The position numbers were made by a program, and so were the translations under genes. The notes under the pieces were generated by a model. That model was not told the DNA's origin, did no database searches, and worked only from the letters and a program-made list of their open reading frames with translations. From Ostrea edulis (Eukaryota): 64,000 nucleotides of DNA. Location of the stretch: contig NC_079171.1 in NCBI RefSeq assembly GCF_947568905.1, positions 28,458,001 through 28,522,000 on the forward strand, given 5' to 3'. Position 1 is the stretch's first letter. Every line of letters starts with the position of its first letter. Positions 26,065-53,210 of this stretch are shown piece after piece.

Positions 26065-26160
26065 GTTGGGTTTTTTTTGGCATCTATAACAAAAGTTTGA
26101 GGTCAATTTTAAAATTAAACTCGCACATTTCTCTGATGTATGTGATGATTTCGCTTTCAG

Positions 26161-26328
26161 GTTGCCCAGTGATTTTGCCTCTATGATCTACACAGTGGGG
26201 GTCAGTGAGGGAGGGATGGAGGAGTGGGACTACGTATGGAACAGGTCGCTGTCCACTAACGTGGCCGTGGAAAGGGAGATGCTGATGCAGGCCCTGGGGC
26301 AGTCCCAGAAACCATGGCTACTCTGGAG
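26161..26328 (+). CDS. M1 aminopeptidase exon 12: LPSDFASMIYTVGVSEGGMEEWDYVWNRSLSTNVAVEREMLMQALGQSQKPWLLW(R)
   Basis: gctttcag / gtgatg, 168 nt. P.D....Y..G...G...EW and E...L..AL motifs. Confidence 0.93.
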
Positions 26329-26646
26329 GTGATGATTCTCTCTGTCTCTTTCTCTCTTTCTTTCTTTCTCTCTCTCCGGCTTATATTGACCCTATTCGAC
26401 ACACTATGCCACGATAAACAACCCTTATCGCTACGGTCCTCAACACCATGTATCCGTCATACTTTGTGGTGATTCATTTGAAGCTGATGACCTCTTCACA
26501 AGGGATACAAATTCTCGGCCGAGGGCGTAAATCAACATAGAAACAATCTAGTACGCAATCGACTGGTTAAAATACGACTAAATCTCCCACTGAAAATGGT
26601 ATTTTGATGAAGTCAGTCAAATGGAATCACCAGTACCGATATCTTA

Positions 26647-27391: not shown

Positions 27392-27583
27392 GTAAGCACT
27401 GAACCACGTGACCGATCAATGTAGGCGGTCAAGTTAGACCTTGATCATTGACCTTTCCAATTTTAATTTTCAAATAAAGAATTATCTGCAAATTCTGTTC
27501 ACGTCAAACATATTACAAACTTAACTTTCCAAGAGATTTGTCATGCAAGTGATGCTACAGTGTATTATCTGATTTCTTTATAG

Positions 27584-27724
27584 ATACGCCAATTGGATCT
27601 TTGATCCAAGCAAAATAAGGAGGCAGGACGTTAGATTGGTTATTAGCTACCTGTCGAAGCGCCCCCTGGGGAGGATGATCTCTCTACATCTCTTGATGAC
27701 GAAATGGGACAGATTAAATGAACA
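27584..27724 (+). CDS. M1 aminopeptidase exon 13: YANWIFDPSKIRRQDVRLVISYLSKRPLGRMISLHLLMTKWDRLNE(Q)
   Basis: tttctttatag / gtaagt, 141 nt. IR.QD and P.G......W motifs. Confidence 0.92.
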
Positions 27725-28208
27725 GTAAGTCCCCGCATGCTGCCATGAAAACTGTCACAGTGAACTAGCGATATCTAGAGGTCGCTTTCATCTGATTGCA
27801 AGCTTTACCAGATGGCGCTACTCAAGCTTCGCTTTTATCTCAGTTTTCGTCTCTGAGGCAGTCCACTGTAAAATTTTAAAAACAAAACCGCGTAGGAATG
27901 AAAAATGATACTTTAAATATCTTAGTACATCAAGCACATATGTATTTTTACAGGGAAATTAAAGAGTTTGCATGATAGTTGTAATGTCCCCGTTAAATGA
28001 ACAATCATTACAGACCTTTCATTTAAGTGTCTTATAAGATTCTTGTAAAATTGTCTATAGGAGAGGGGAAAGTGAAATTTGGTAGACAACTTGATATTTG
28101 GATAAAATTGGGAAAATAAATTATCAGCAATATTCATATCATCAAATTGTGATACATTGCACATTAATCAAAAGTGAATTTTTCTAACAATTTTTTTTAT
28201 TATTACAG

Positions 28209-31623: not shown

Positions 31624-31877
31624 GTTAACTATCTGTTAAACTTCATTAATTTTCATGCAACTGAGCCCTGGTGTTTTGTGGTAATTAGTAACTGTTTAAA
31701 TTGGAAAATAAAATAGGTAGTGCCCAATATAGTGAGTACTGTACACTATTTCTTGCGATAAAATCTTAACAAGAGTTCCGCAAGACGAGCCACATCCAAT
31801 GAGTGTCTACTAACGTTTTTTTATGAAGGTCGTTCCCAAACTCAACAGGTTCTTCCTCTCTTGATAACAAAGCTACA

Positions 31878-33290
31878 TGAAAAGGTGAAGATAACGAACA
31901 GTGATCAATCTCATAACTTCTATAAAGAACACAAAATTAAGAGGTGGCCAAACACGGACTCCTGGATATACAAGAGGTGCGATCGGGTGCCTAGGAGGAG
32001 TAAGCATCCCCTGTTGACCGGTCACACCCGCCGTAAGCCCTATATCTTGATCAGGTAAACACAGTAATCCGTAGTCAAAATCAGTGTGATAAGAACGGCC
32101 TAACAATCGGTATGAAACACGTCAAACACCTTTGACCCAATGACAGGTTGTATTGGCAAACTAGATCGTTATAACGACCATCGACTTCGCGAAATGCTGA
32201 CTTTAAACAAGACTGTTTTAAAAAACCCTGTAACATCAACTTGGTTGTCAGTAGCCTGCCTTAATTTTTAAAAAAACCTGATCACACGCAGAACAAGCTC
32301 TTGTGTATCAAATCAGTTGAGGGACATTAACGCCATATGCAGATGATAATGGAATATTGCTAGATAAATATGAGAAATTGACGATGGAAAAGCCGAAATC
32401 ATCCAGTTTGTCATAAAGTTGACAGTTTGCCGTTAGCATGAAAGGTAAAGATAACAGTCATCAATCTCATAACTCCTACAAGGAATACAAAATAAAGAGT
32501 TGGACAAACACGGACCCCTGACATAATATGGGAAGTTGATGATGGAGAAGCTGCAATCAACCCGTTTGTTATGAAGTTGAATGGTTAGTTTGCCGTTAAT
32601 ATTCATTTTCAATAAGATATCTAAGTACGATGCAGATGTGGGTGATCCTGTTGTGTCTTTTATCTCGAGTTCACTGGAATATATCGAATTGACACATGAA
32701 TAAAAAAATTGTCATTGTTAATAGATAAAACGTCGTCGATTTATCTAAATGTCGAGTTGAAAGTCACACCTAGAGATTTTTTCTTCTACTTGTATGTAGA
32801 AGCTTTTGAATAAATTCTTGTCTCATAAGAGTATACAAATAGGTCAGCTAACAAAGGAGCACAATTCGTGCCCATGGGAATTCCAACATACTGTTGGAAA
32901 TCCAGATCACTAAAGACTACGAATGTATTATCATTGAAAATTCGGCTCGCAAGTATTCAAAATCGGCCCGATAATGCTGCCTCCAGCTGGAGGCGGCGAA
33001 TTTCCAGTTTACGTAATGGCGCCGGTTCTGACGTTTTCCTGGCACTGTAAATATCAAAATCATAAAAAAGCGAGGAAAACCTCAGGTATGTCGGACTACA
33101 TCTGACCCAACGACAGGTTGTATTCATTTGACAAACAAAGGAGTTATTTTTGAATGATCGATCGCTAGATATGAATATTTCCTTTTCCCATTTTTGTTGG
33201 AGAAGCAACTGTTTATTATGTCCATTCAATTTATCGTGAGGAATGGTCCTACAGTGTATAAAGTATTGAAAAGTCATACGTTTTGATGTT
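31878..33290 (-). mobile_element. Decayed Penelope-like retroelement (RT remnants with stops, plus 3' noncoding end)
   Basis: TIPHDKL motif, TFNSTFR*IDDVLSIN (YIDD catalytic motif with a stop), ELEIKDTT..SASYLDILL, then the family 3' tail ending ttatcttcaccttttcat. Confidence 0.8.
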
Positions 33291-33761
33291 GATTTGAGAA
33301 AATTTTTGTTGTTATTTCAAATTTACTAGTTCTTTAAAATCTTTTAGAATCCACATTTGATTTACACCACATCTGGCCTATGTAGTGGTACAGTACGTTG
33401 GACGTTTCGCTATCACATGAAAGGCGATGATAACGAACAGTGATCAATCTCATAACTCCTATAAGCAATACAAAGTAGATAGTTGGGCAAACCTGGACCC
33501 CTGGACATACCAGGGTGGGATCAGGTGTCTAGGAGGGTAAGCATCCCCTGATCCGTGTTTGCCCAATTTTCTATCTTGTATTTGTTATAGAAGTTATGAG
33601 ACTGATCACTATTCGTTTTCTTCGCCTTTCATCAGACAACTGCTTTTTTGCATAAAAATGGCACTTAACATATTCATATCTTGCGAGCAGTCATCTAAAA
33701 CATTACTTCGTTAAACTCCACTCTAAATACACACAACTTTTCTTCTAACGTTGATATAAAA

Positions 33762-34216
33762 TAGGGGCGGATCCAGGAATTGCGGTTAGGGGGCCCAACT
33801 CTATGAGGCAAGGGAGTTTGGGGGCCGCCCTGAGCTCCCCCCCCCCCCCCCCCCCCCCCCGTGGGTTCAGGGCAAAGCCCCCGGAAGCACATTTGGACTT
33901 TACAGATTTTATAGGGCTTCAGATATGTCTCCTATATAGTGATATTTACTATTTTCTGTGACATTCGATAGAGGGAAATCAATAAAATGACGCAAATTTT
34001 AATGGTTTTTGGAAAAGTTAAGTTCTCCCAATAAAAGTAATTCAGTAAATCAAAAGATTTTGTCATTTTATTGCGCTGAGAGTGGAAGAAATCATTGCTC
34101 CTTTTATCGTTTATATTTTTCTAAACAAGACACCACGATTTACCTTAAATTTGAATTTTTGTAAGGGGGGGGGGGGGGGGGGGGGGGTCGGCTGCGCCAC
34201 CTTAAATCCGCCACTG
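33762..34216. mobile_element. Putative hAT-like MITE with long C and G homopolymers
   Basis: taggggcggatcc .. aaatccgccactg imperfect inverted ends. Confidence 0.5.
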
Positions 34217-34618
34217 TAAAAGACGTTATCTATGTAATATAAAATATTCCAACAATTTCTTGGAATTTACATGGGCACAATTTGTGTTCCTTTGATTGCT
34301 GCCCTGTTTTGTATTCTTATGATGTAGAATTTATTCATAACTTCTATACGAGAAGAGAAAATATCTTGTTGTGTCCTCATATATGAACATAGACGTTAAT
34401 GGCAATCTAACAACTCAACTCTGTGAAAAACAGGATAACTCAGCTTTTTCACAATGAACTTCACAAAATTTAGAAATTCATTTCAAAATTAAGGATTATC
34501 TCCCTCATGCATAGCTCTTATCCTTGGACGAATTTGGCTCCACTTGTTTGGCACGCTGTTTTTGGCTATATTTAGATCTAAAACTTCATAGTTATTTCGG
34601 ATTTCAAACATTTCGGTT

Positions 34619-35364
34619 GAGCATCACTGAAGAGACATTGTAATGATTCCGGATATTTGAGGTACGACCATGCGGAGTTCTCAATTAGTCACTTTCCATC
34701 ACGTGATCTAATTTGTGTATAAATACCGAGACTCCGCAGTTGTCTGTGTCATTCTGATAGAAGACCCAGCCAAGTTGAGAGGACGAGATTATGTGTACTA
34801 ATAAAGTATTCAAAGTAAACAATTCCTCGCCTGTTCTTACAGTTAGAGAGTGAATTTGGAAGGCCATCAGAAGTCTGGCCTGCCACGAAGAGGTTGACCT
34901 CCAGTAAAGAGGCTAGCCATAGTTTGTTTTCTTTGGTGTCGTCCGCATTGGCTGAACAGACCGTCGTCCAGGCCGTTGTACTCATTGTCCGTCCTGAATA
35001 AGGCATCCTACAATGAGTGCAGCGGTTGAAGGGCTACCACATATACTGTCCGTCCTGAATAAGGCGTCCTACAGTATATGGGGTAATCCGAGGGCGACTG
35101 GGCTCTAGATCTACATTTTGTCAAGTTAGCACTACCAGTTTATCGTTGCTTGCCTCTGATTGATATAGTGATTCTCTGTTTGATGATAATTAACCTAGAT
35201 AAGGTTAGGACATATTTGTATATTTTGGCAGTCCACTAAAATCATACCAATTAGTTTAAATTAGTTATTGTTGAATACCCCAAACCCTGGAATTGACCAG
35301 GTACGATCCCAGAAGTTAACGTTAATACGTTACAACATTACTTGTCGAAATGCGCATCTGGTGC
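34619..35364 (+). ncRNA. Minimal type I hammerhead ribozyme of a Penelope-like element, interrupted in loop II by a solo LTR
   Basis: GCATCA (stem I) CTGAAGA (core) GACA [loop + insert] TGTC (stem II) GAAA TGCGCA T C (palindromic stem III; predicted cleavage after C35358) TGGTGC (stem I partner, one G-U pair). Confidence 0.8.
34639..35334 (+). mobile_element. Solo LTR (Gypsy-like), 696 bp
   Basis: Ends TGTAATG...CGTTACA; 4-bp TSD ACAT at 34635-34638 and 35335-35338; TATAAAT near 34719 and AATAAA near 34800; internal ~27-bp direct repeat. Removing it restores the ribozyme exactly. Confidence 0.85.
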
Positions 35365-36374
35365 ATCAAAATTGGTACCGTATAAGTTTTACATGCATGT
35401 ATTTATGTAGCACTATTCCATTATCACCTACATACGGTATTTTTAATATCTCTCAATTGATTCAATACTTGAAAGCATGGTCAGCGTATGATCACTTTTT
35501 AAATCGAGGCAGGCTACTGACAAATAAGTTTAGTCACAGGGGTTTGAACAGCCTTCTTTAAAGTCAACATTTCGAAAATTCTATGTTCGTTATAATACAG
35601 CTTGTCATTAGATCAAAAACCGTCTGATGTGTCAAGCCCCTCTTTTAAAACCAGATTTCCACTACGGTTTACCTGAATGAGATAGATGACTCGCGATGGA
35701 TGTGACTGGTCAACAGAGGATGCTTATTCCTATAGGCATTCTATTAATACTAGTCGGTTTACGCTTGCGGTCAGTTTTGTCCTACATAGTGCGTTGTTCT
35801 TGAAAGGCTTCACGTCTGCCAGACATAAAAATGTTTGACCAGAAAAAACAATCCCCAATCGGCTCCACTCGCATGTAGTTTGTCTTTGGTTTACGGTAGC
35901 TCATTACACTAAAATGTTATTCAAACGCTCGTTAAAACACCTTATATGAAATATCATTTCACCATCAAAAGAGTGATACAAGCTCTCGGTTATATTATAT
36001 TTGCATTCTTGTGATTTTTTTCTGGAATGATAAAACGGGTGTTTTGTTTGCAGAGTCCAAAAAACATGTCAGTTAGATTTATTAAACAAACATATTTCAA
36101 AAACACATATTGGAATGAAATGACTAAAATTCAGATTTATCGCTATATTTTGGAATCATTAAAAAAAAAAATTTTATCCATAGATTCAAAGATATCAATA
36201 ATTTACCTTTTCCACTTTCATAGATGTTTTCTAGAAAATTATCACGTCTATCCGATCCTTTTCTGCATATTTTATTACATATTCATATCATGCACCAAAA
36301 CACAGCGAAATTTTGACTCTAAAATCTATTTGTAAACAAAACACCTGTTCAATAATTCCGGGGGGAAATCACAC

Positions 36375-37477
36375 ACAAGAGGCCCATGGGCCTAGAATCG
36401 CTTTTCTGATACATTGTAGAACAGGCAAAAATTCTTACTAACCAAGATTCATCAATTAACAAAGTTTGATGATGTTAAGTCAAATAGTACCTGAAAATTT
36501 AAATGTAACTGTCCAAAAGTGGGTCACGGTGACCTACTTTAGGTCCACACACTGAAGACTCAAGATGCATCAACTGACAAGTCAAATAGTATTCAAATAT
36601 AGCCGTCAAATTCCAAAAGAATGCCACAGTGACCTACTTTTTGGTCGACACACTCTGAAGACTCAAGCCCCATCAACTGACAAAGTTTGATGATTGTAAG
36701 TAAAATAGTATCTGAAATATTCAAATATAGCTGTCAAAATCCAAAAATAGGTCACGGTGACCTATTTTTTGGTCGACACACTCTGAAGACTCAAGACCCA
36801 TCAACTGTTAAAGTTTGATAATTGTAAGTCAAATAGTATCTTAAATATTAAAATATAGCCGTCAAATTCCAAAAGTAGGTCACGGTGACCTACTTTTTGG
36901 TCAACAAACTATGAAAACTCAAGATGCATCAACTGACAAAGTTTGATGATCCTAGCTTTCATAGTGTCCAAAATATGCATCTAAAATTGAAAATGACCTA
37001 CCTTTGAGACAACATATTAGGTCCTAAGATGCATCAACTGACAAAATTTGATGATCCTAGTCCTTATACTAAGCAAAATATCAAAGTTTTAACAAAACAA
37101 AAGTTATGGTCAACTTTGAAGTGACCTTGAGACCACACCCTTTGCCCCAGGATGATGCCTTGAACAATTTTTTATCTCATCCTTAAGCATAAGTTTGGTG
37201 ATAATTTGCCCGATGGTTCTTGAGGAGAAGATTTTTTAGCAACCACTACTTTTATTTGCATTTTCCAAATTATCTCCCCTTGTTAAAGGGTCACAACCCT
37301 AGTTTTAGTACAATTGAAAGCCCTTGGGCCAAGGATACCCTGTGACAAATTTGACAAAAATTGGCCAAGGGGTTCTTGAGATATAGCCCTTTTTTCAAAA
37401 AAGTTGACGCACACCGCACGCCAGAGATATGGCCATATGATAAGGTCTTAGAGCCTTCGGCTCAGAAGAGCTAAAAA
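36375..37477 (-). mobile_element. Helentron/HINE-like element with ~127-bp central tandem repeats
   Basis: Minus-strand start tttttagctcttctgagccgaaggctc, end aggcccatgggcctcttgt palindrome; 3-4 internal repeats. Confidence 0.75.
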
Positions 37478-43495: not shown

Positions 43496-43719
43496 TCAAC
43501 CGAGGAAGAAGCCCCTGGGTCGTGGTTCATTGATCGGCATCGTCTGTAGGACCTCATCAAGAAGCTGAAGTGGTCGGTGAAGTTGTACCTCAATCCAACA
43601 GGGCGTCTCCTTGATGCTGTGTCGGGGGTAGTCTGGTCCCCAGCCCTTCACAAAGCTCAGACGTAAAATACAGAGTCTTCTCAGGTCATCCACACCGATG
43701 CCGGCCGCAGCACTCAGGC
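43496..43719 (-). CDS. SMAD4: SMAD4 last coding exon: [73 protein letters not shown]
   Basis: ttccag acceptor; L3 loop [10 protein letters not shown]; no C-terminal SSxS motif, as expected for a co-Smad. Confidence 0.97.
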
Positions 43720-44125
43720 CTGGAAGTTAAAAAACAATCACTGTGATGACATCAGAAAAGAGTCACTGTGATGACATCATAAAACAATTAGCGCCCGAGG
43801 GTGATAACCCTACTCAGACCTGATAATTTGTGATGTCTCACTGATAAACAGTCCATAATAATTTTATCCTGAAGAATCTGAACGTTTAAAAACTATCACA
43901 CATTTATTGACTTGTACCATGTATCTTTTTCTTATTTAAAACGTCAACAAATTCGTAATAACTTTCTGCAGAAAATTCTGATAACTTTTCAATAGTATTT
44001 GAGGGGTGAAAATAATGTTACCCTCAACCACATACAATATTTTGTTTTACACTCAATGTCATACATTTATTAGATACATGTATAATTATATGCTAAAGAA
44101 AGCAAAACATTGAAGTTTGAGAAAG

Positions 44126-47912: not shown

Positions 47913-48319
47913 TTAGACGACAGAAAACTGCACATCATCAAGTCAATGAACAGCATCACCTGTCAGGTCAACAACGGGTGGATATTCCTACTTTTTTGCA
48001 GAAGACACACATTTTCAAAGTATTTTAATTTGAAAAGAAAAAAAAGTTGAACATAGGCACTGCCAACAACAGACCAAAAACATGATTAGTCATGCACTGG
48101 GGTTTCATGCTACAGGGTTGTGACTGAATTCCTCAGAAATCATGGGAAAACTGGTCAAAAGGGAGGAAAACACTTCACCCTACCTGGAAAAATATCATTT
48201 TCTGTCACTTTAGATCAAACCCAGAGTGTTTCCATTTTTTCGCAAATAGAGCCATTTGGAGAGAGGAATAATCACACCCCTGAGTTACCTAGGGTAGATT
48301 CTATGTTGTATCTTCATAC

Positions 48320-48488
48320 CTTGATATAAGCACTGGGGTAGATCTTATGGACTGCATCCCCCGGTTGTCGACCCGCCTCGCGGTCTAAGTAGTACGACTG
48401 GACAAACACACTGTGATCACTGACGCAGCGGATCCAAACATCGCCTTCTCCGTTGTAGTCCAGCTGGACTCCTTTGCCAATGTGTAAC
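48320..48488 (-). CDS. SMAD4: SMAD4 MH2 exon: [56 protein letters not shown]
   Basis: ttgacag / gtatga, 169 nt; SMAD4-specific sequence. Confidence 0.97.
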
Positions 48489-48908
48489 CTGTCAAGTAGT
48501 ACCGTGTCAACATACATCTCAATAACGTGTCAACATATAACTCGTACATCTCAATAACGTGTCAACATACAACTCATACATCTCAATAACGTGTCAACAT
48601 ATAACTTGTACAAGTATAGATTCTTGATTTGACCTACATAAACAGTACCGTTACATCTCATTAACATCTTGTGTCAACATACAACTCATACGACTGACCA
48701 TCATAAATTCTAAGTTTTATGCCAATTGTGTGAAGGTTTTTTCAAATTTGGCTAAATAATAAAAAAACAAGAGGTCCATGGGCCAGATCATTCACCTGAG
48801 TCACCTTGGCCCATATCTGAAGACTTCTCATATATATTTGTACGTAAAATCTTGGTCCTTATTGTGGCCCCAACCTAAACCTGGTGGCCAGGTCACTTGA
48901 GTCACATA

Positions 48909-50314: not shown

Positions 50315-50796
50315 TAAATTTTTTTTACGGTCATCCTAGTATCACACAAGTAAAAGACTTGAGGGACACCTGAGTATTACAAAAGTAAAAGACTAAGTGA
50401 GAGGAGCTGTTATGTTTTGGTGTTATACATATAAGTACAGATATCAAACTCAAAGATCAAAGGACTTCAGTTTCCATGACCTAAAGTAACGTTTCTTTCT
50501 TCTTTTGAATTAGCAAAGTTTGTGCCAAGCATGAACTAGTCTCTGTTACAAGTCGTGGACTTGGAAAATAATTCTGAAGTCTCTAATTAATGACCTTGAC
50601 CTTATAAAACCATGGGTTTAGGTCATGACACGTCTGTTCTCTAATAAACAATTTCTTGTGTCCAGTCTGAGCTTCAAATGCCTCTCTTTCAGTGGAAATT
50701 TACATGCACGAATCAAACCCCTCAAATGTTAACAAAAACCGAGCAAAATAGGCGACTTTGATAATCTAAAAATAACATCCTTCAGACTGACCCTAC

Positions 50797-50980
50797 CTGG
50801 CTTTGTCACTGGCCTCGGTGCGATGGACATTAGACAGCTGACCCAGACAGAAGCGGTCCAGACTGGAAGGATCTGTGTAACCGTCCACCGTGACCCTCGC
50901 ATAGCTGTAGGGAACTTTAAAGGTCTCACCGACCTGTTGGTCCAGCTCAAAATACGTAATGGTGCACCAGAACTCGGGGG
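50797..50980 (-). CDS. SMAD4: SMAD4 MH2 exon: (A)[60 protein letters not shown](R)
   Basis: ttaacag acceptor, gtaggg donor, 184 nt. Near identical to the start of the SMAD4 MH2 domain ([31 protein letters not shown]). Confidence 0.96.
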
Positions 50981-53210
50981 CTGTTAAGGTTAAAGAAGAA
51001 TTAATCTTACTGTGAGAATCCATTTTATGTGTTTACCACAATAAAATAAATCTCAATATGAAGTAAATATATATTCTTATTAAATTAACACCTAAAATCC
51101 ACCCACATGGAAAAGTACATCAGGTAAATAAGCTAGCTCCACCCTAATGTGACTTATCAATATCATTGGTTGAAAATGAAACAACTGTGTCAATTTCCAC
51201 TCAATATAGCTTAAGGTAATTCCCCATACCACATCTTAATATTGAAAAACCTACAGATTTCTATCAGCATTTGCATGTATTTTGTTGAGGATGTATATTG
51301 ACCAAATTCCCGAAGAAAAATATGTTTAGCGGCCTTTCCCAGAGTACAGCCACTTCTAAAAATAGAACACATCACTTTAAAACAAGCAGTGTTAATATAC
51401 ATACATTTTAAGGCACTGTCTTCATTTAAATGATAGAAATATGTTTTCTTCATATGAATTGAAGAAAATGTATTGCATTTGACTGTTTTCAATAATTTTT
51501 CATCTACTGAACCATGCTCTTGGTTTCAAGGTGATGAAAATGCACGTATAGTGGTGAAATTTTGACTAATCATAGCCTACCATATCTGGAAAATTGTGTT
51601 TTCAAAAACCTTCAGATTTTTTAAACATTTCAATATGTTTTACCTTTACACTCCAGCAATCATTTGATATAAGAAGTAGATAGGGTATCGGATAATTTGA
51701 GAGCCCAATGACCCCTCTAGGTTAAAAACCTTGAAAAAACGCATATTGGAAAATGGTGTCTAAAATTCCTATCTCTGCAAACATGTTTCATTCATCATTT
51801 ACATTATTATATTACCATTTCAAGAAATATTACAGGGTGGATTTTGAAAAACAGTTTAAAACATTAAAGCTTCAATTAGCTAAAAACCATTTTCATTGAT
51901 TGCCGTAAGCTTTAGGGATCGGGCTTGAAGTTAGAAAAATCCTAACTTTACTATGGAGCTTACTAAATCCATACCCTATGTCACATGAACACTGACATGA
52001 CGTCACAACAGATGAAAAAATAAAATTATGTCGCCAGATCTTGTTGGAACAAAGTTATGTAGATCAGAATGAGTTGTACATTTTAACGCTCATTCAGAGA
52101 ATGCTAACCTATGCTCAAGTTACAAATTTTGGGAAATTCGAATATTTTAATAATTTTTATTTTCTGGTAGTTTTTAACAATACGACACAGCCATGTGATG
52201 CGAGTCTTAACGACATGAAACTATCGCGTACATTCCGAGACGTTTTAATCAAAACATCAGTAAAGGTCATGTCCGGCCAGAAAAAGAAAATTACATTACA
52301 ACACCCATGATCTATACTGTATGTACAAGAGCACAAACGTACGACACCTACACATAGAGATAGGTCCTATACGTATGTGATAAATCTGTCAGCGTCTGAT
52401 CTAAATTGAACAACCTGAAATCATTAGACACAACGGAGATATGCACATACATGTTCATGTATATGCACATTTATTATGGATTCGGAGGGCCCCAAAAGCG
52501 ACTTTTGTCGTGTAAATAAATATTTAAAGAATTGCGAGGGGAAAGGGGGGGGGGGGTTGGGGGGGTTACAATGTCAGTATAGCTTTAGATTATGCATATA
52601 TTCTATTTAGATCTTGACAACATCGATCGTATTCTTTCAGGTTTAAATAAATTATAAGGAAAACATAACAAAAATATAAGACTGTCGACATCAGTACATG
52701 TAGCACACAAAAATTTGCATTTTGTTGAATAGGAGATTCAATATGTCTACCCGTCATTAACTATCAGAAATCACACAAAAGAAATGGCCTACAATAGATA
52801 CAATGAAAATTGGCAACACGATTTACATCATAATCTGCAATATATGCAGAAATCTCACGGAATATTACTAAACGACTGTGTGTCACAACGCAATGTGTAT
52901 GGAGAATTTACGACTTCGCGATGTATATAACTATAAGCATTTTCTCTCCCGAGCGTTGTCTTGTATAAAACCGGCTTGTTTGTATTATTGCAATTCGTAC
53001 AATGTATGTTGTTTTTTAATTCTAAATTTTTGTTATTTGCTTTCAAACAATCAGTACTAATACGGTCTACAAAATTTACCAAATTGCCATCGGGTTCGTT
53101 GAATGTGTTATAACGTTCATGACTCGTGAATAACGTTTCTAACGTTATTTGACGTGGTATGGGGAACTACCTTAATTTGATTAATAACCAAAGAAAAAAG
53201 ATTTGTCAGT

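What the first reader, a model, noticed from the sequence alone, without database searches (positions are those of the whole stretch)
34619..35364. Hammerhead ribozyme split in two by a solo LTR inserted exactly in loop II
Seen: deleting 34639-35338 (LTR plus one ACAT copy) restores GCATCA-CTGAAGA-GACA-ttact-TGTC-GAAA-TGCGCA-TC|TGGTGC. All core nucleotides and stems I and II are intact, and stem III is a loopless palindrome. Established: Penelope-like elements carry such minimal type I hammerheads, which are thought to act as dimers through the palindromic stem III. Inference: the insertion sits in the one position that spares the core, so this may be a natural 700-nt loop-expanded or bimolecular ribozyme. 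The LTR TATA box points at the 3' half. The motif is sense to the aminopeptidase gene, ~4.5 kb past its stop, and could cut read-through RNA before it overlaps the SMAD4 3' end.
Basis: partly seen in the sequence, partly recalled or inferred. Interest (0 to 1): 0.8.

Follow-up and report, generated by a model that had tools for sequence, protein, structure and literature searches.

The report
Hammerhead repeat copy broken by LTR
One truncated copy of a hammerhead-ribozyme repeat present about 15,000 times in this mollusc genome was hit by a solo retrotransposon LTR inside the ribozyme's loop II; this is an ordinary nested transposon insertion, and nothing indicates a working split ribozyme.

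Summary
Window 34621-34638 and 35339-35364 are the two halves of a type I hammerhead. They are separated by a 696-nt TG..CA solo LTR (34639-35334) with a 4-bp target-site duplication, ACAT.

- **The hammerhead family.** Uninterrupted copies with the same flanks exist. The 32-nt core occurs about 15,300 times in this genome. An intact copy scores 31.2 bits against Rfam Hammerhead_1, just under the 34-bit threshold. The family is an ORF-less repeat of about 349 nt with a fixed 3' end, variable 5' truncation and frequent partial tandems. That matches the known metazoan non-LTR retrozyme / Penelope-type architecture, and this scan has noted it many times elsewhere in the genome.
- **The window copy.** It is a 235-nt, 5'-truncated copy with a single hammerhead.
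- **The LTR.** It belongs to a Ty3/gypsy family with about 190 LTR termini, mostly solo LTRs with 4-bp duplications.
- **Chance or selection.** Both junctions are unique in the genome. Another LTR copy landed in another family copy, inside the catalytic CUGANGA box, so there is no core-sparing pattern.
- **RNA evidence.** RNA contigs show only the uninterrupted family form, never either junction.
- **Folding.** A trimmed construct could still pair the two halves, but with native flanks this is strongly disfavoured.

Verdict: a real but ordinary nested insertion. The functional reading is unsupported.

The parts
34465..34638 (+). 5' portion of a 5'-truncated copy of the ~349-nt hammerhead-bearing repeat (unit positions ~158-330)
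   Evidence: BLAST against 30 family loci. Many alignments start at 34463-34465 and run to 34639, with up to 99.4% identity (L001).
34621..34638 (+). Hammerhead 5' half: helix I 5' strand GCATCA, core CUGAAGA, helix II 5' strand GACA, first loop-II base
   Evidence: Sequence. Identical to the 5' part of intact copies. Intact copies align to RF00163 positions 1-45.
34635..34638 (.). Target-site duplication ACAT, left copy
   Evidence: Sequence. 4-bp duplications flank 26 of the 37 other sampled loci of this LTR family.
34639..35334 (+). 696-nt solo LTR (TGTAATG...CGTTACA) of a Ty3/gypsy-type family. TATAAATA at 34718-34725, AATAAA at 34800-34805.
   Evidence: 40 full-length genomic matches at 95-98% identity. 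191 5' termini in the genome. Orientation is set by the PBS-side and PPT-side flanks of full elements. A full element, L099, encodes gag, protease, RT, RNase H and integrase.
35335..35338 (.). Target-site duplication ACAT, right copy
   Evidence: Sequence.
35339..35364 (+). Hammerhead 3' half: rest of loop II (TACT), helix II 3' strand TGTC, GAAA, palindromic helix III TGCGCA, U16.1-C17 (TC), predicted cleavage site between 35358 and 35359, helix I 3' strand TGGTGC
   Evidence: Sequence. Identical to intact copies. Rfam alignment of an intact copy.
35365..35394 (+). 3' tail of the repeat. The family's fixed 3' terminus lies ~36 nt past the cleavage site.
   Evidence: 26 of 30 sampled family copies end at unit position 34-40, and two more within six positions of that range. 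Hundreds of contigs in the laid runs diverge right after 35394 (table 7).

Best explanation
This is a nested transposon insertion with no function of its own.

1. A non-autonomous hammerhead-bearing retroelement first inserted into the transposon-rich spacer between an M1 aminopeptidase gene (+) and a SMAD4-like gene (-). The element is an ORF-less repeat of about 349 nt, of the metazoan non-LTR retrozyme / Penelope-mobilised kind. It arrived as a 235-nt, 5'-truncated copy carrying a single hammerhead near its 3' end.
2. A Ty3/gypsy-type LTR retrotransposon later integrated between the first and second bases of the hammerhead's loop II and duplicated ACAT.
3. That element then collapsed to a solo LTR, by inference through LTR-LTR recombination.

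The result is a ribozyme whose CUGANGA strand and GAAA/cleavage-site strand lie 700 nt apart in a copy that was already a dead-on-arrival fragment. It most likely does nothing.

Shown here: the anatomy, the family membership, the uniqueness of the junctions, and the absence of junction-spanning RNA contigs. Inferred: the order of events and the inactivity.
For: - **Family size.** The intact motif occurs 15,327 times at up to 3 mismatches, against 0 for the reversed control. Flanks are identical in intact copies.
- **Family architecture.** The 3' end is fixed ~36 nt after the cleavage site, the 5' end is variable, and about half the loci are partial tandems with the hammerheads 345-351 nt apart. 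The only ORFs over 180 aa in 60 sampled loci lie outside the repeat units. This matches PLE-type insertions (5' truncation, partial tandems, a 30-40-bp tail, a hammerhead near the 3' end; PMC8557442) and non-LTR retrozymes (PMC7229834).
- **Hammerhead identity.** An intact copy scores 31.2 bits against Rfam RF00163 over the full model.
- **The LTR.** It has TG..CA ends and a 4-bp target-site duplication. 26 of the 37 other sampled loci are solo LTRs with perfect 4-bp duplications. A full element carries gypsy-order domains.
- **One-off event.** Each junction occurs exactly once in the 895-Mb genome.
- **No core-sparing bias.** L033 carries the same LTR family inside the CUGANGA box of another family copy, with duplication AAAA. 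That is 1 of 37 other copies in a family that covers roughly 0.5% of the genome, which chance alone would give about 19% of the time.
- **RNA.** The true RNA-seq run X3 holds a 377-nt contig of the uninterrupted form. No listed contig spans 34638/34639 or 35334/35335. The unique flank 34152-34348 has depth 0-0.3 in the RNA runs.
- **Folding.** With native flanks (34465-35394), helix I has p = 3e-8 and helix II p = 1e-4. Forcing the hammerhead fold costs +10.2 kcal/mol, against +4.3 for the LTR-free version.
Against: - In a construct trimmed exactly to the motif ends (34621-35364 or 34615-35370), ViennaRNA still gives helices I and II p = 0.64-0.87, at a cost of 0.9 kcal/mol or less.
- The reason is that the LTR's 5' GUAAUG (34640-34645) pairs with CAUUAC (35336-35341, duplication copy plus loop remainder). 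This extends helix II by 6 bp and packs the LTR as a side domain. Residual cis-cleavage in vitro is therefore not excluded.
- A discontinuous hammerhead with a 150-1500-nt insertion is known in mammalian Clec2 3' UTRs (PMC6155905).
- The laid runs are contigs. They show presence, not absence, so lack of transcription at this locus is not proven.
Confidence: 0.9

Rival explanations
1. Loop-II-expanded cis ribozyme. Read-through RNA from the aminopeptidase side folds so that the LTR forms a closed side domain. Helices I and II re-form and the RNA self-cleaves at 35358/35359, acting as a terminator-like element ahead of the SMAD4 3' end.
For: - All core nucleotides and both strands of helices I and II are intact.
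- In the trimmed 744-756-nt RNA the helices are predicted with p = 0.64-0.87, helped by a fortuitous 6-bp extension of helix II.
- The Clec2 discontinuous hammerhead is a precedent (PMC6155905).
Against: - With only 156 nt of native 5' flank the pairing probability falls to 1e-4 to 3e-8.
- The 5' half would have to wait through about 700 nt of transcription while local hairpins with the LTR 5' end are available, at -9 to -15 kcal/mol.
- Loop II, which in natural hammerheads makes the tertiary contacts needed at physiological Mg2+ (PMC6155905), is destroyed.
- Helix III is only 2 bp plus a tetraloop, and there is no second hammerhead nearby to dimerise with.
- The junctions are unique and the element is a random truncated copy.
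- RNA runs give about zero depth over the unique flank left of the element (34152-34348).
- The site lies about 8 kb from the SMAD4 stop and at least 6 kb from the last aminopeptidase exon I could verify.
Confidence: 0.04
2. Bimolecular ribozyme. An LTR-initiated transcript carrying only the 3' half is cut in trans after pairing with a separate RNA that carries the 5' half.
For: The LTR is in sense orientation, with a TATA-like box at 34718-34725 upstream of the 3' half.
Against: - The two RNAs would be held together by only 6 + 4 bp.
- The LTR carries AATAAA at 34800-34805, about 80 nt past the TATA box, so LTR transcripts may end long before 35339.
- No RNA contig joins the LTR to the 3' half. 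The one X1 contig that reaches 35338 continues for 49 nt that do not fit the window.
- In dimeric hammerheads each active site still needs its own CUGANGA strand, so abundant intact family RNA cannot substitute for it.
Confidence: 0.01
3. Targeted integration. This gypsy-type family prefers the hammerhead repeat (its sequence, structure or chromatin), so LTR-in-hammerhead events are enriched rather than random.
For: - 2 of 38 sampled LTR loci, including the window, lie inside hammerhead motifs of this family.
- The target ACATTAC resembles the reverse complement of the LTR 5' end, TGTAATG.
Against: - Setting aside the ascertained window copy, the count is 1 of 37, against an expectation of about 0.2, giving P of about 0.19.
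- The two insertion points differ (loop II versus the CUGANGA box).
- The other duplications are simply AT-rich and share no motif.
- Neither junction recurs anywhere in the genome.
Confidence: 0.05

Closest known systems
Metazoan non-LTR retrozymes (Cervera & de la Pena 2020, PMC7229834). In mussel: about 5000 type I hammerheads in repeats of ~350-390 bp, expressed as circular and linear RNAs.
   Same: - ORF-less, low-GC repeat of about 349 nt with one type I hammerhead per unit.
- Dimers and trimers with 345-351-nt spacing.
- Thousands of copies in a mollusc genome.
- Family RNA is present in an RNA-seq run.
   Different: - The window copy is less than one unit, carries one hammerhead, and that hammerhead is interrupted by an LTR.
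- Circular RNA was not demonstrated here.
- Self-cleavage was not tested.
Penelope-like element insertions and their hammerheads (Cervera & de la Pena 2014, PMC4209133; Craig et al. 2021, PMC8557442)
   Same: - Fixed 3' end with a tail of about 36 nt after the hammerhead, variable 5' truncation and partial tandems.
- A palindromic helix III that allows dimeric hammerheads.
   Different: - No RT or GIY-YIG ORF next to the sampled copies.
- The hammerhead has the canonical metazoan helix sizes (I = 6 bp, II = 4 bp, III = 2 bp plus a 4-nt loop), not the PLE min-HHR form (helix II of 7-8 bp, no helix III).
Discontinuous hammerhead of mammalian Clec2 3' UTRs (Martick et al. 2008, as summarised in PMC6155905)
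   Same: The two strands of a hammerhead core are separated by hundreds of nucleotides in one transcription unit.
   Different: - In Clec2 the insertion is in helix I of a type III hammerhead, sits in a transcribed 3' UTR, is conserved across species and has been shown to cleave.
- Here the insertion is a recent LTR in loop II of a type I motif, in one repeat copy, in intergenic DNA.
- There is no evidence of conservation or of transcription.
Solo LTRs of Ty3/gypsy retrotransposons
   Same: - TG..CA termini and a 4-bp target-site duplication.
- Many sister solo LTRs.
- Full elements with gag-PR-RT-RH-IN order.
   Different: Nothing unusual. The family also has 2.3-kb non-autonomous derivatives.

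Membership tests
Hammerhead ribozyme, type I (Rfam RF00163) | Conserved core: CUGANGA ... GAAA ... U-H at the cleavage site | tested here: met
   CUGAAGA 34627-34633, GAAA 35347-35350, UC 35357-35358. The same is seen in intact copies.
Hammerhead ribozyme, type I (Rfam RF00163) | Three helices around the core, with helix I open (type I topology) | tested here: met
   - Helix I: 6 bp, GCAUCA/UGGUGC.
- Helix II: 4 bp, GACA/UGUC.
- Helix III: A-U and U-A closing GCGC, or an 8-bp intermolecular AUGCGCAU helix.
- The 44-nt joined motif folds with helices I and II.
- The cofolded dimer is -27.3 kcal/mol, against 2 x -7.8 for monomers.
Hammerhead ribozyme, type I (Rfam RF00163) | Covariance-model score at or above the curated gathering score (34 bits) | tested here: not met
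   - Intact copy L022:1495-1538 scores 31.2 bits, E 2.3e-6, over model positions 1-45: a near miss.
- The interrupted window copy gives no hit.
- 20 loci searched together at E<=1 gave no hit.
Hammerhead ribozyme, type I (Rfam RF00163) | Contiguous motif on one RNA, able to fold co-transcriptionally | tested here: not met
   700 nt (LTR plus duplication) separate the halves in the window copy. With native flanks the pairing probability is 1e-4 to 3e-8.
Hammerhead ribozyme, type I (Rfam RF00163) | Site-specific self-cleavage | not testable with these tools
   Needs a transcription/cleavage assay.
Metazoan non-LTR retrozyme | Tandem ORF-less units of ~170-400 nt, each with a type I hammerhead | tested here: met
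   Met for the family: spacing of 345-351 nt in 13 of 30 loci, with a trimer in L022, and no ORFs within the repeat units. The window copy itself is a single truncated unit and does not meet it.
Metazoan non-LTR retrozyme | Expressed as unit-length linear or circular RNA | tested here: inconclusive
   RNA-seq run X3 holds a 377-nt contig of the uninterrupted family, roughly one unit plus k-1. Contigs cannot show circularity or RNA ends.
Penelope-type (target-primed) insertion | Fixed 3' end, variable 5' truncation, partial tandems, short 3' tail | tested here: met
   26 of 30 copies end at unit position 34-40, and 5' starts are spread across the unit. Compare PMC8557442.
Solo LTR of a Ty3/gypsy retrotransposon | TG..CA termini, flanking target-site duplication, sister copies, full elements with PR-RT-RH-IN order | tested here: met
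Discontinuous (split) functional hammerhead, Clec2-like | Lies in a transcribed UTR, is conserved between species, and cleaves | tested here: inconclusive
   No contig over the junctions or the unique flanks in the RNA runs. The junctions are unique in the genome. Cross-species conservation and cleavage could not be tested.

The most novel reading that the evidence does not exclude
The LTR 5' end (GUAAUG) is by chance complementary to the duplicated target plus the loop remainder (CAUUAC). Helix II would therefore be lengthened to about 10 bp, with the 680-nt LTR body as a side domain. On that reading, the split motif would still be a foldable hammerhead with a 700-nt loop II that self-cleaves when transcribed. 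It would be the first natural example of a loop-II-expanded type I hammerhead created by a transposon.
Probability: 0.04. Interest if true: 0.5.

Novelty: new member of a known kind. Interest (0 to 1): 0.15.

Why it matters
It matters little for biology. The locus is a textbook nested insertion and can be annotated as repeat within repeat.

Three points have some use:
- The locus gives clean, dated anatomy for two active-looking transposon families in this mollusc genome: a hammerhead retrozyme-like repeat of about 15,000 copies, and a gypsy family with very young non-autonomous derivatives.
- Rfam's gathering threshold misses this whole hammerhead family by about 3 bits. Genome annotations will therefore not flag about 15,000 ribozyme motifs.
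- The interrupted copy could serve as a ready-made natural construct for asking how much loop II expansion a type I hammerhead tolerates. That is a biochemical curiosity, not an inferred function.

Tried and rejected
- **Rfam on the whole window** at gathering scores found nothing.
- **RF00163 over the whole genome** with the genome search gave 0 matches. Only 73 of 85,583 candidates were scored and the tool's own controls also gave nothing, so this is uninformative.
- **Rfam at E<=1 on 20 loci together** gave no hammerhead hit. A 161-nt search was needed to see the 31.2-bit match.
- **A relaxed hammerhead pattern in the window** gave 3 hits against 1.9 expected, and none is this family. The family core at up to 3 mismatches has no other copy in the window, so no partner hammerhead is nearby.
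The family is so young that covariation would be uninformative anyway: 20 of 30 copies sampled without regard to the hammerhead have an identical 44-mer.
- **A DNA search with the 136-nt upstream part** of the unit returned nothing because its words are too common. I replaced it with a 32-mer pattern, which gave 5,289 hits.
- **LTR preference for the hammerhead repeat.** I tested whether the LTR family targets the repeat: 1 of 37 other copies, not significant.
- **Autonomous partner.** I looked for a PLE ORF beside 60 family loci and found none. The only RT-like ORF (L013) looks like an unrelated LINE.
- **LTR presence/absence polymorphism** could not be resolved. Contigs in the laid runs break at the repeats, and the many '700-nt skip' joints come from other, uninterrupted family copies, not from an empty allele.
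- **The exact aminopeptidase stop codon** was not determined.

Full report
**1. The observation**

- The 5' half reads GCATCA (34621-34626), CTGAAGA (34627-34633), GACA (34634-34637) and T (34638).
- A 696-nt element follows, starting TGTAATG and ending CGTTACA (34639-35334).
- A second ACAT copy lies at 35335-35338, matching 34635-34638.
- The 3' half reads TACT, TGTC, GAAA, TGCGCA, TC and TGGTGC (35339-35364).

Removing 34639-35338 recreates a 44-nt type I hammerhead motif. Helix I has 6 bp and helix II has 4 bp closing a 5-nt loop. The complete core is present (CUGANGA, GAAA, U-C before the cleavage site). Helix III, together with A15.1/U16.1, forms the 8-nt palindrome AUGCGCAU. The 44-mer folds with helices I and II. 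Two copies cofold through the palindrome at -27.3 kcal/mol, against -15.6 for two monomers.

**2. It is not a chance motif**

- The joined 32-nt core occurs 15,327 times in the 895-Mb genome at up to 3 mismatches, with zero hits for the reversed control.
- The first 30 loci carry the same flanking sequence as the window on both sides of the motif.
- An intact copy (L022:1495-1538) aligns end to end with Rfam Hammerhead_1: 31.2 bits against a gathering score of 34, E 2.3e-6.
- Searches of larger sequence sets missed it. Standard annotation will therefore not flag this family.
- By helix sizes this is the canonical metazoan type I hammerhead of PMC4209133 and PMC7229834. It is not the Penelope 'min-HHR', which has a long helix II and no helix III.

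**3. What the host element is**

I mapped 30 loci onto a unit taken from a trimer in L022.
- The unit is 349 nt long.
- 26 of 30 copies end at unit position 34-40, about 36 nt past the cleavage site.
- The 5' ends are scattered across the unit, and element lengths run from about 100 nt to about 1000 nt.
- About half the loci carry two or three hammerheads 345-351 nt apart.
- The only ORFs over 180 aa in 60 sampled loci lie outside the repeat units.
- An upstream 32-mer of the unit is three times rarer than the hammerhead core (5,289 against 15,327 hits), as 5' truncation predicts.

A fixed 3' end with a short tail, 5' truncation and partial tandems are the hallmarks of Penelope-type insertions (PMC8557442). 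They are also the hallmarks of the non-LTR retrozymes proposed to be mobilised by such elements (PMC7229834; bioRxiv 10.64898/2026.07.22.740005).

Earlier notes of this scan describe the same 349-351-nt tandem hammerhead unit at many other places in this genome.

The family is young. In a sample chosen without regard to the hammerhead, 20 of 30 copies have an identical 44-mer and the rest differ by 1-2 bases.

The window copy spans 34465-34638 plus 35339-35394. It covers unit positions 158 to 40, is 235 nt long and has one hammerhead. It was therefore a truncated, single-ribozyme fragment before the LTR arrived. No other copy of the motif lies in the 64-kb window.

**4. What the insertion is**

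- The 696-nt element has 40 scored full-length matches at 95-98% identity and 191 5' termini in the genome.
- Of the 37 other loci I examined, 26 are solo LTRs with perfect 4-bp target-site duplications. These are AT-rich and share no motif.
- The remaining loci are ends of full or short elements. There the ...TTACA end is followed by gaatttggtggc and the TGTAATG end is preceded by the purine-rich aggcatgggtag. This fixes the window LTR in + orientation.
- A 7.3-kb element (L099) encodes gag, aspartic protease, RT, RNase H and integrase in Ty3/gypsy order, with its reading frame broken.
- Short 2.3-kb derivatives have LTR pairs that are 99.65-99.86% identical, so the family was mobile very recently.

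**5. Is the position in loop II meaningful?**

- Both junction sequences occur exactly once in the genome. The composite was never copied, and the site is not a recurrent target.
- One of the 37 other LTR copies (L033, C8:73322761) also lies in a copy of the hammerhead family. It sits inside the CUGANGA box, with duplication AAAA.
- The family covers roughly 0.5% of the genome, so one hit in 37 is expected by chance about 19% of the time.
- There is no sign that insertions sparing the core are favoured.
- Loop II is also not a neutral position. In natural hammerheads, loop-loop contacts between helices I and II give activity at physiological Mg2+ (PMC6155905).

**6. RNA evidence**

All four laid runs are contigs, so they show presence only.
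- The one run on record as RNA-seq (X3) holds a 377-nt contig of the uninterrupted family form. It lies on 34465-34634 and 35335-35394 with at most one mismatch. Its length is about one unit plus k-1, which fits a tandem or circular template but does not prove one.
- The many '700-nt skip' joints in all runs have the same origin. They come from other family copies, not from an empty allele.
- No listed contig spans 34638/34639 or 35334/35335.
- The unique flank 34152-34348 has depth 0-0.34 in the RNA-type runs.
- There is thus no evidence of read-through transcription across the locus.

**7. Folding**

- For an RNA trimmed exactly to the motif (34621-35364 or 34615-35370), ViennaRNA still predicts helices I and II with p = 0.64-0.87.
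- This happens because the LTR's 5' GUAAUG pairs with CAUUAC (the second duplication copy plus the loop remainder). That extends helix II by 6 bp and closes the LTR off as a side domain.
- With the element's own flanks (34465-35394), helix II drops to p = 1e-4 and helix I to p = 3e-8.
- Forcing the hammerhead fold then costs +10.2 kcal/mol, against +4.3 for the LTR-free element.
- The nascent 5' half can form local hairpins with the first 30-60 nt of the LTR, at -9 to -15 kcal/mol.
- Residual cleavage of a trimmed construct in vitro is therefore conceivable. Native-context activity is unlikely.

**8. Gene context**

- ERAP1_C-domain exons of an M1 aminopeptidase lie on the + strand at 26090-26329 and 27573-27725.
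- MH2 exons of a SMAD4-like gene lie on the - strand at 50796-51032, 48317-48529 and 43499-43726, the last being the C-terminal exon.
- The motif is sense to the aminopeptidase gene, at least 6 kb past its last exon that I could verify.
- It lies about 8 kb from the SMAD4 stop codon.
- The spacer between the two genes is packed with high-copy repeats.

**9. Verdict**

The functional interpretation is not supported. This is one interrupted, truncated member of a known kind of element (a metazoan hammerhead retrozyme-like repeat), hit once by a gypsy-type LTR. I give 0.90 to the ordinary nested-insertion reading and about 0.04 to any self-cleaving activity of the split motif in vivo. Interest is low.

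Noticed in passing
L033 (G000:C8:73321261-73324953), LTR at 1501-2193: A second copy of the same LTR family is inserted into another, already degenerate, copy of the hammerhead repeat. This one sits inside the CUGANGA box, with target-site duplication AAAA.
   Followed up: yes
L048, L040; genome pairs such as G000:C4:5548550/5550167 and C5:18491832/18493464: The LTR family has short non-autonomous elements of about 2.3 kb (LTR, ~900 nt, LTR). Their LTR pairs are 99.65-99.86% identical, which implies very recent mobilisation. A 7.3-kb gypsy-type element (L099) has LTRs that are 96% identical.
   Followed up: partly
window 36428-36980: Tandem array of a 128-nt unit, 3-5 copies at 80-89% identity. 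Each unit carries a CTGAAGA-like string and a GGTCACGGTGACC palindrome. Depth in the DNA runs is very high, so it is a high-copy repeat.
   Followed up: no
window 33837-33860 and 34165-34187: A run of 23-24 C and a run of 23 G form a perfect inverted pair about 305 nt apart. The origin is unknown. Read-laying skipped these places as repeats.
   Followed up: no
window 33417-33632: 81-nt inverted repeat arms (84% complementary) separated by 54 nt. It looks like a MITE and belongs to a very high-copy family that matches many fetched loci and has extreme depth in all runs.
   Followed up: no
window 31788-32181: Another extremely high-copy repeat, with the highest contig depth of the laid stretch in both the DNA and the RNA-type runs.
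   Followed up: no
run X3, record 13: An RNA-seq contig of 377 nt from the uninterrupted hammerhead family. Its length is close to one 349-nt unit plus k-1, as expected if the assembler closed a circular or tandem template. This hints that the family is expressed, possibly as circular RNA.
   Followed up: partly
L011:611-691: An 81-nt near-perfect palindromic hairpin beside a hammerhead copy. It scores 46 bits against the mir-3688 model on both strands, well below the 84-bit threshold. It is probably a MITE-type hairpin rather than a miRNA.
   Followed up: no
L037 and L045 (G000:C8:54449698 and C8:54383267): Two LTR copies have identical flanks and the same duplication (ATAT) about 66 kb apart. 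This is a segmental duplication, not two independent insertions.
   Followed up: no
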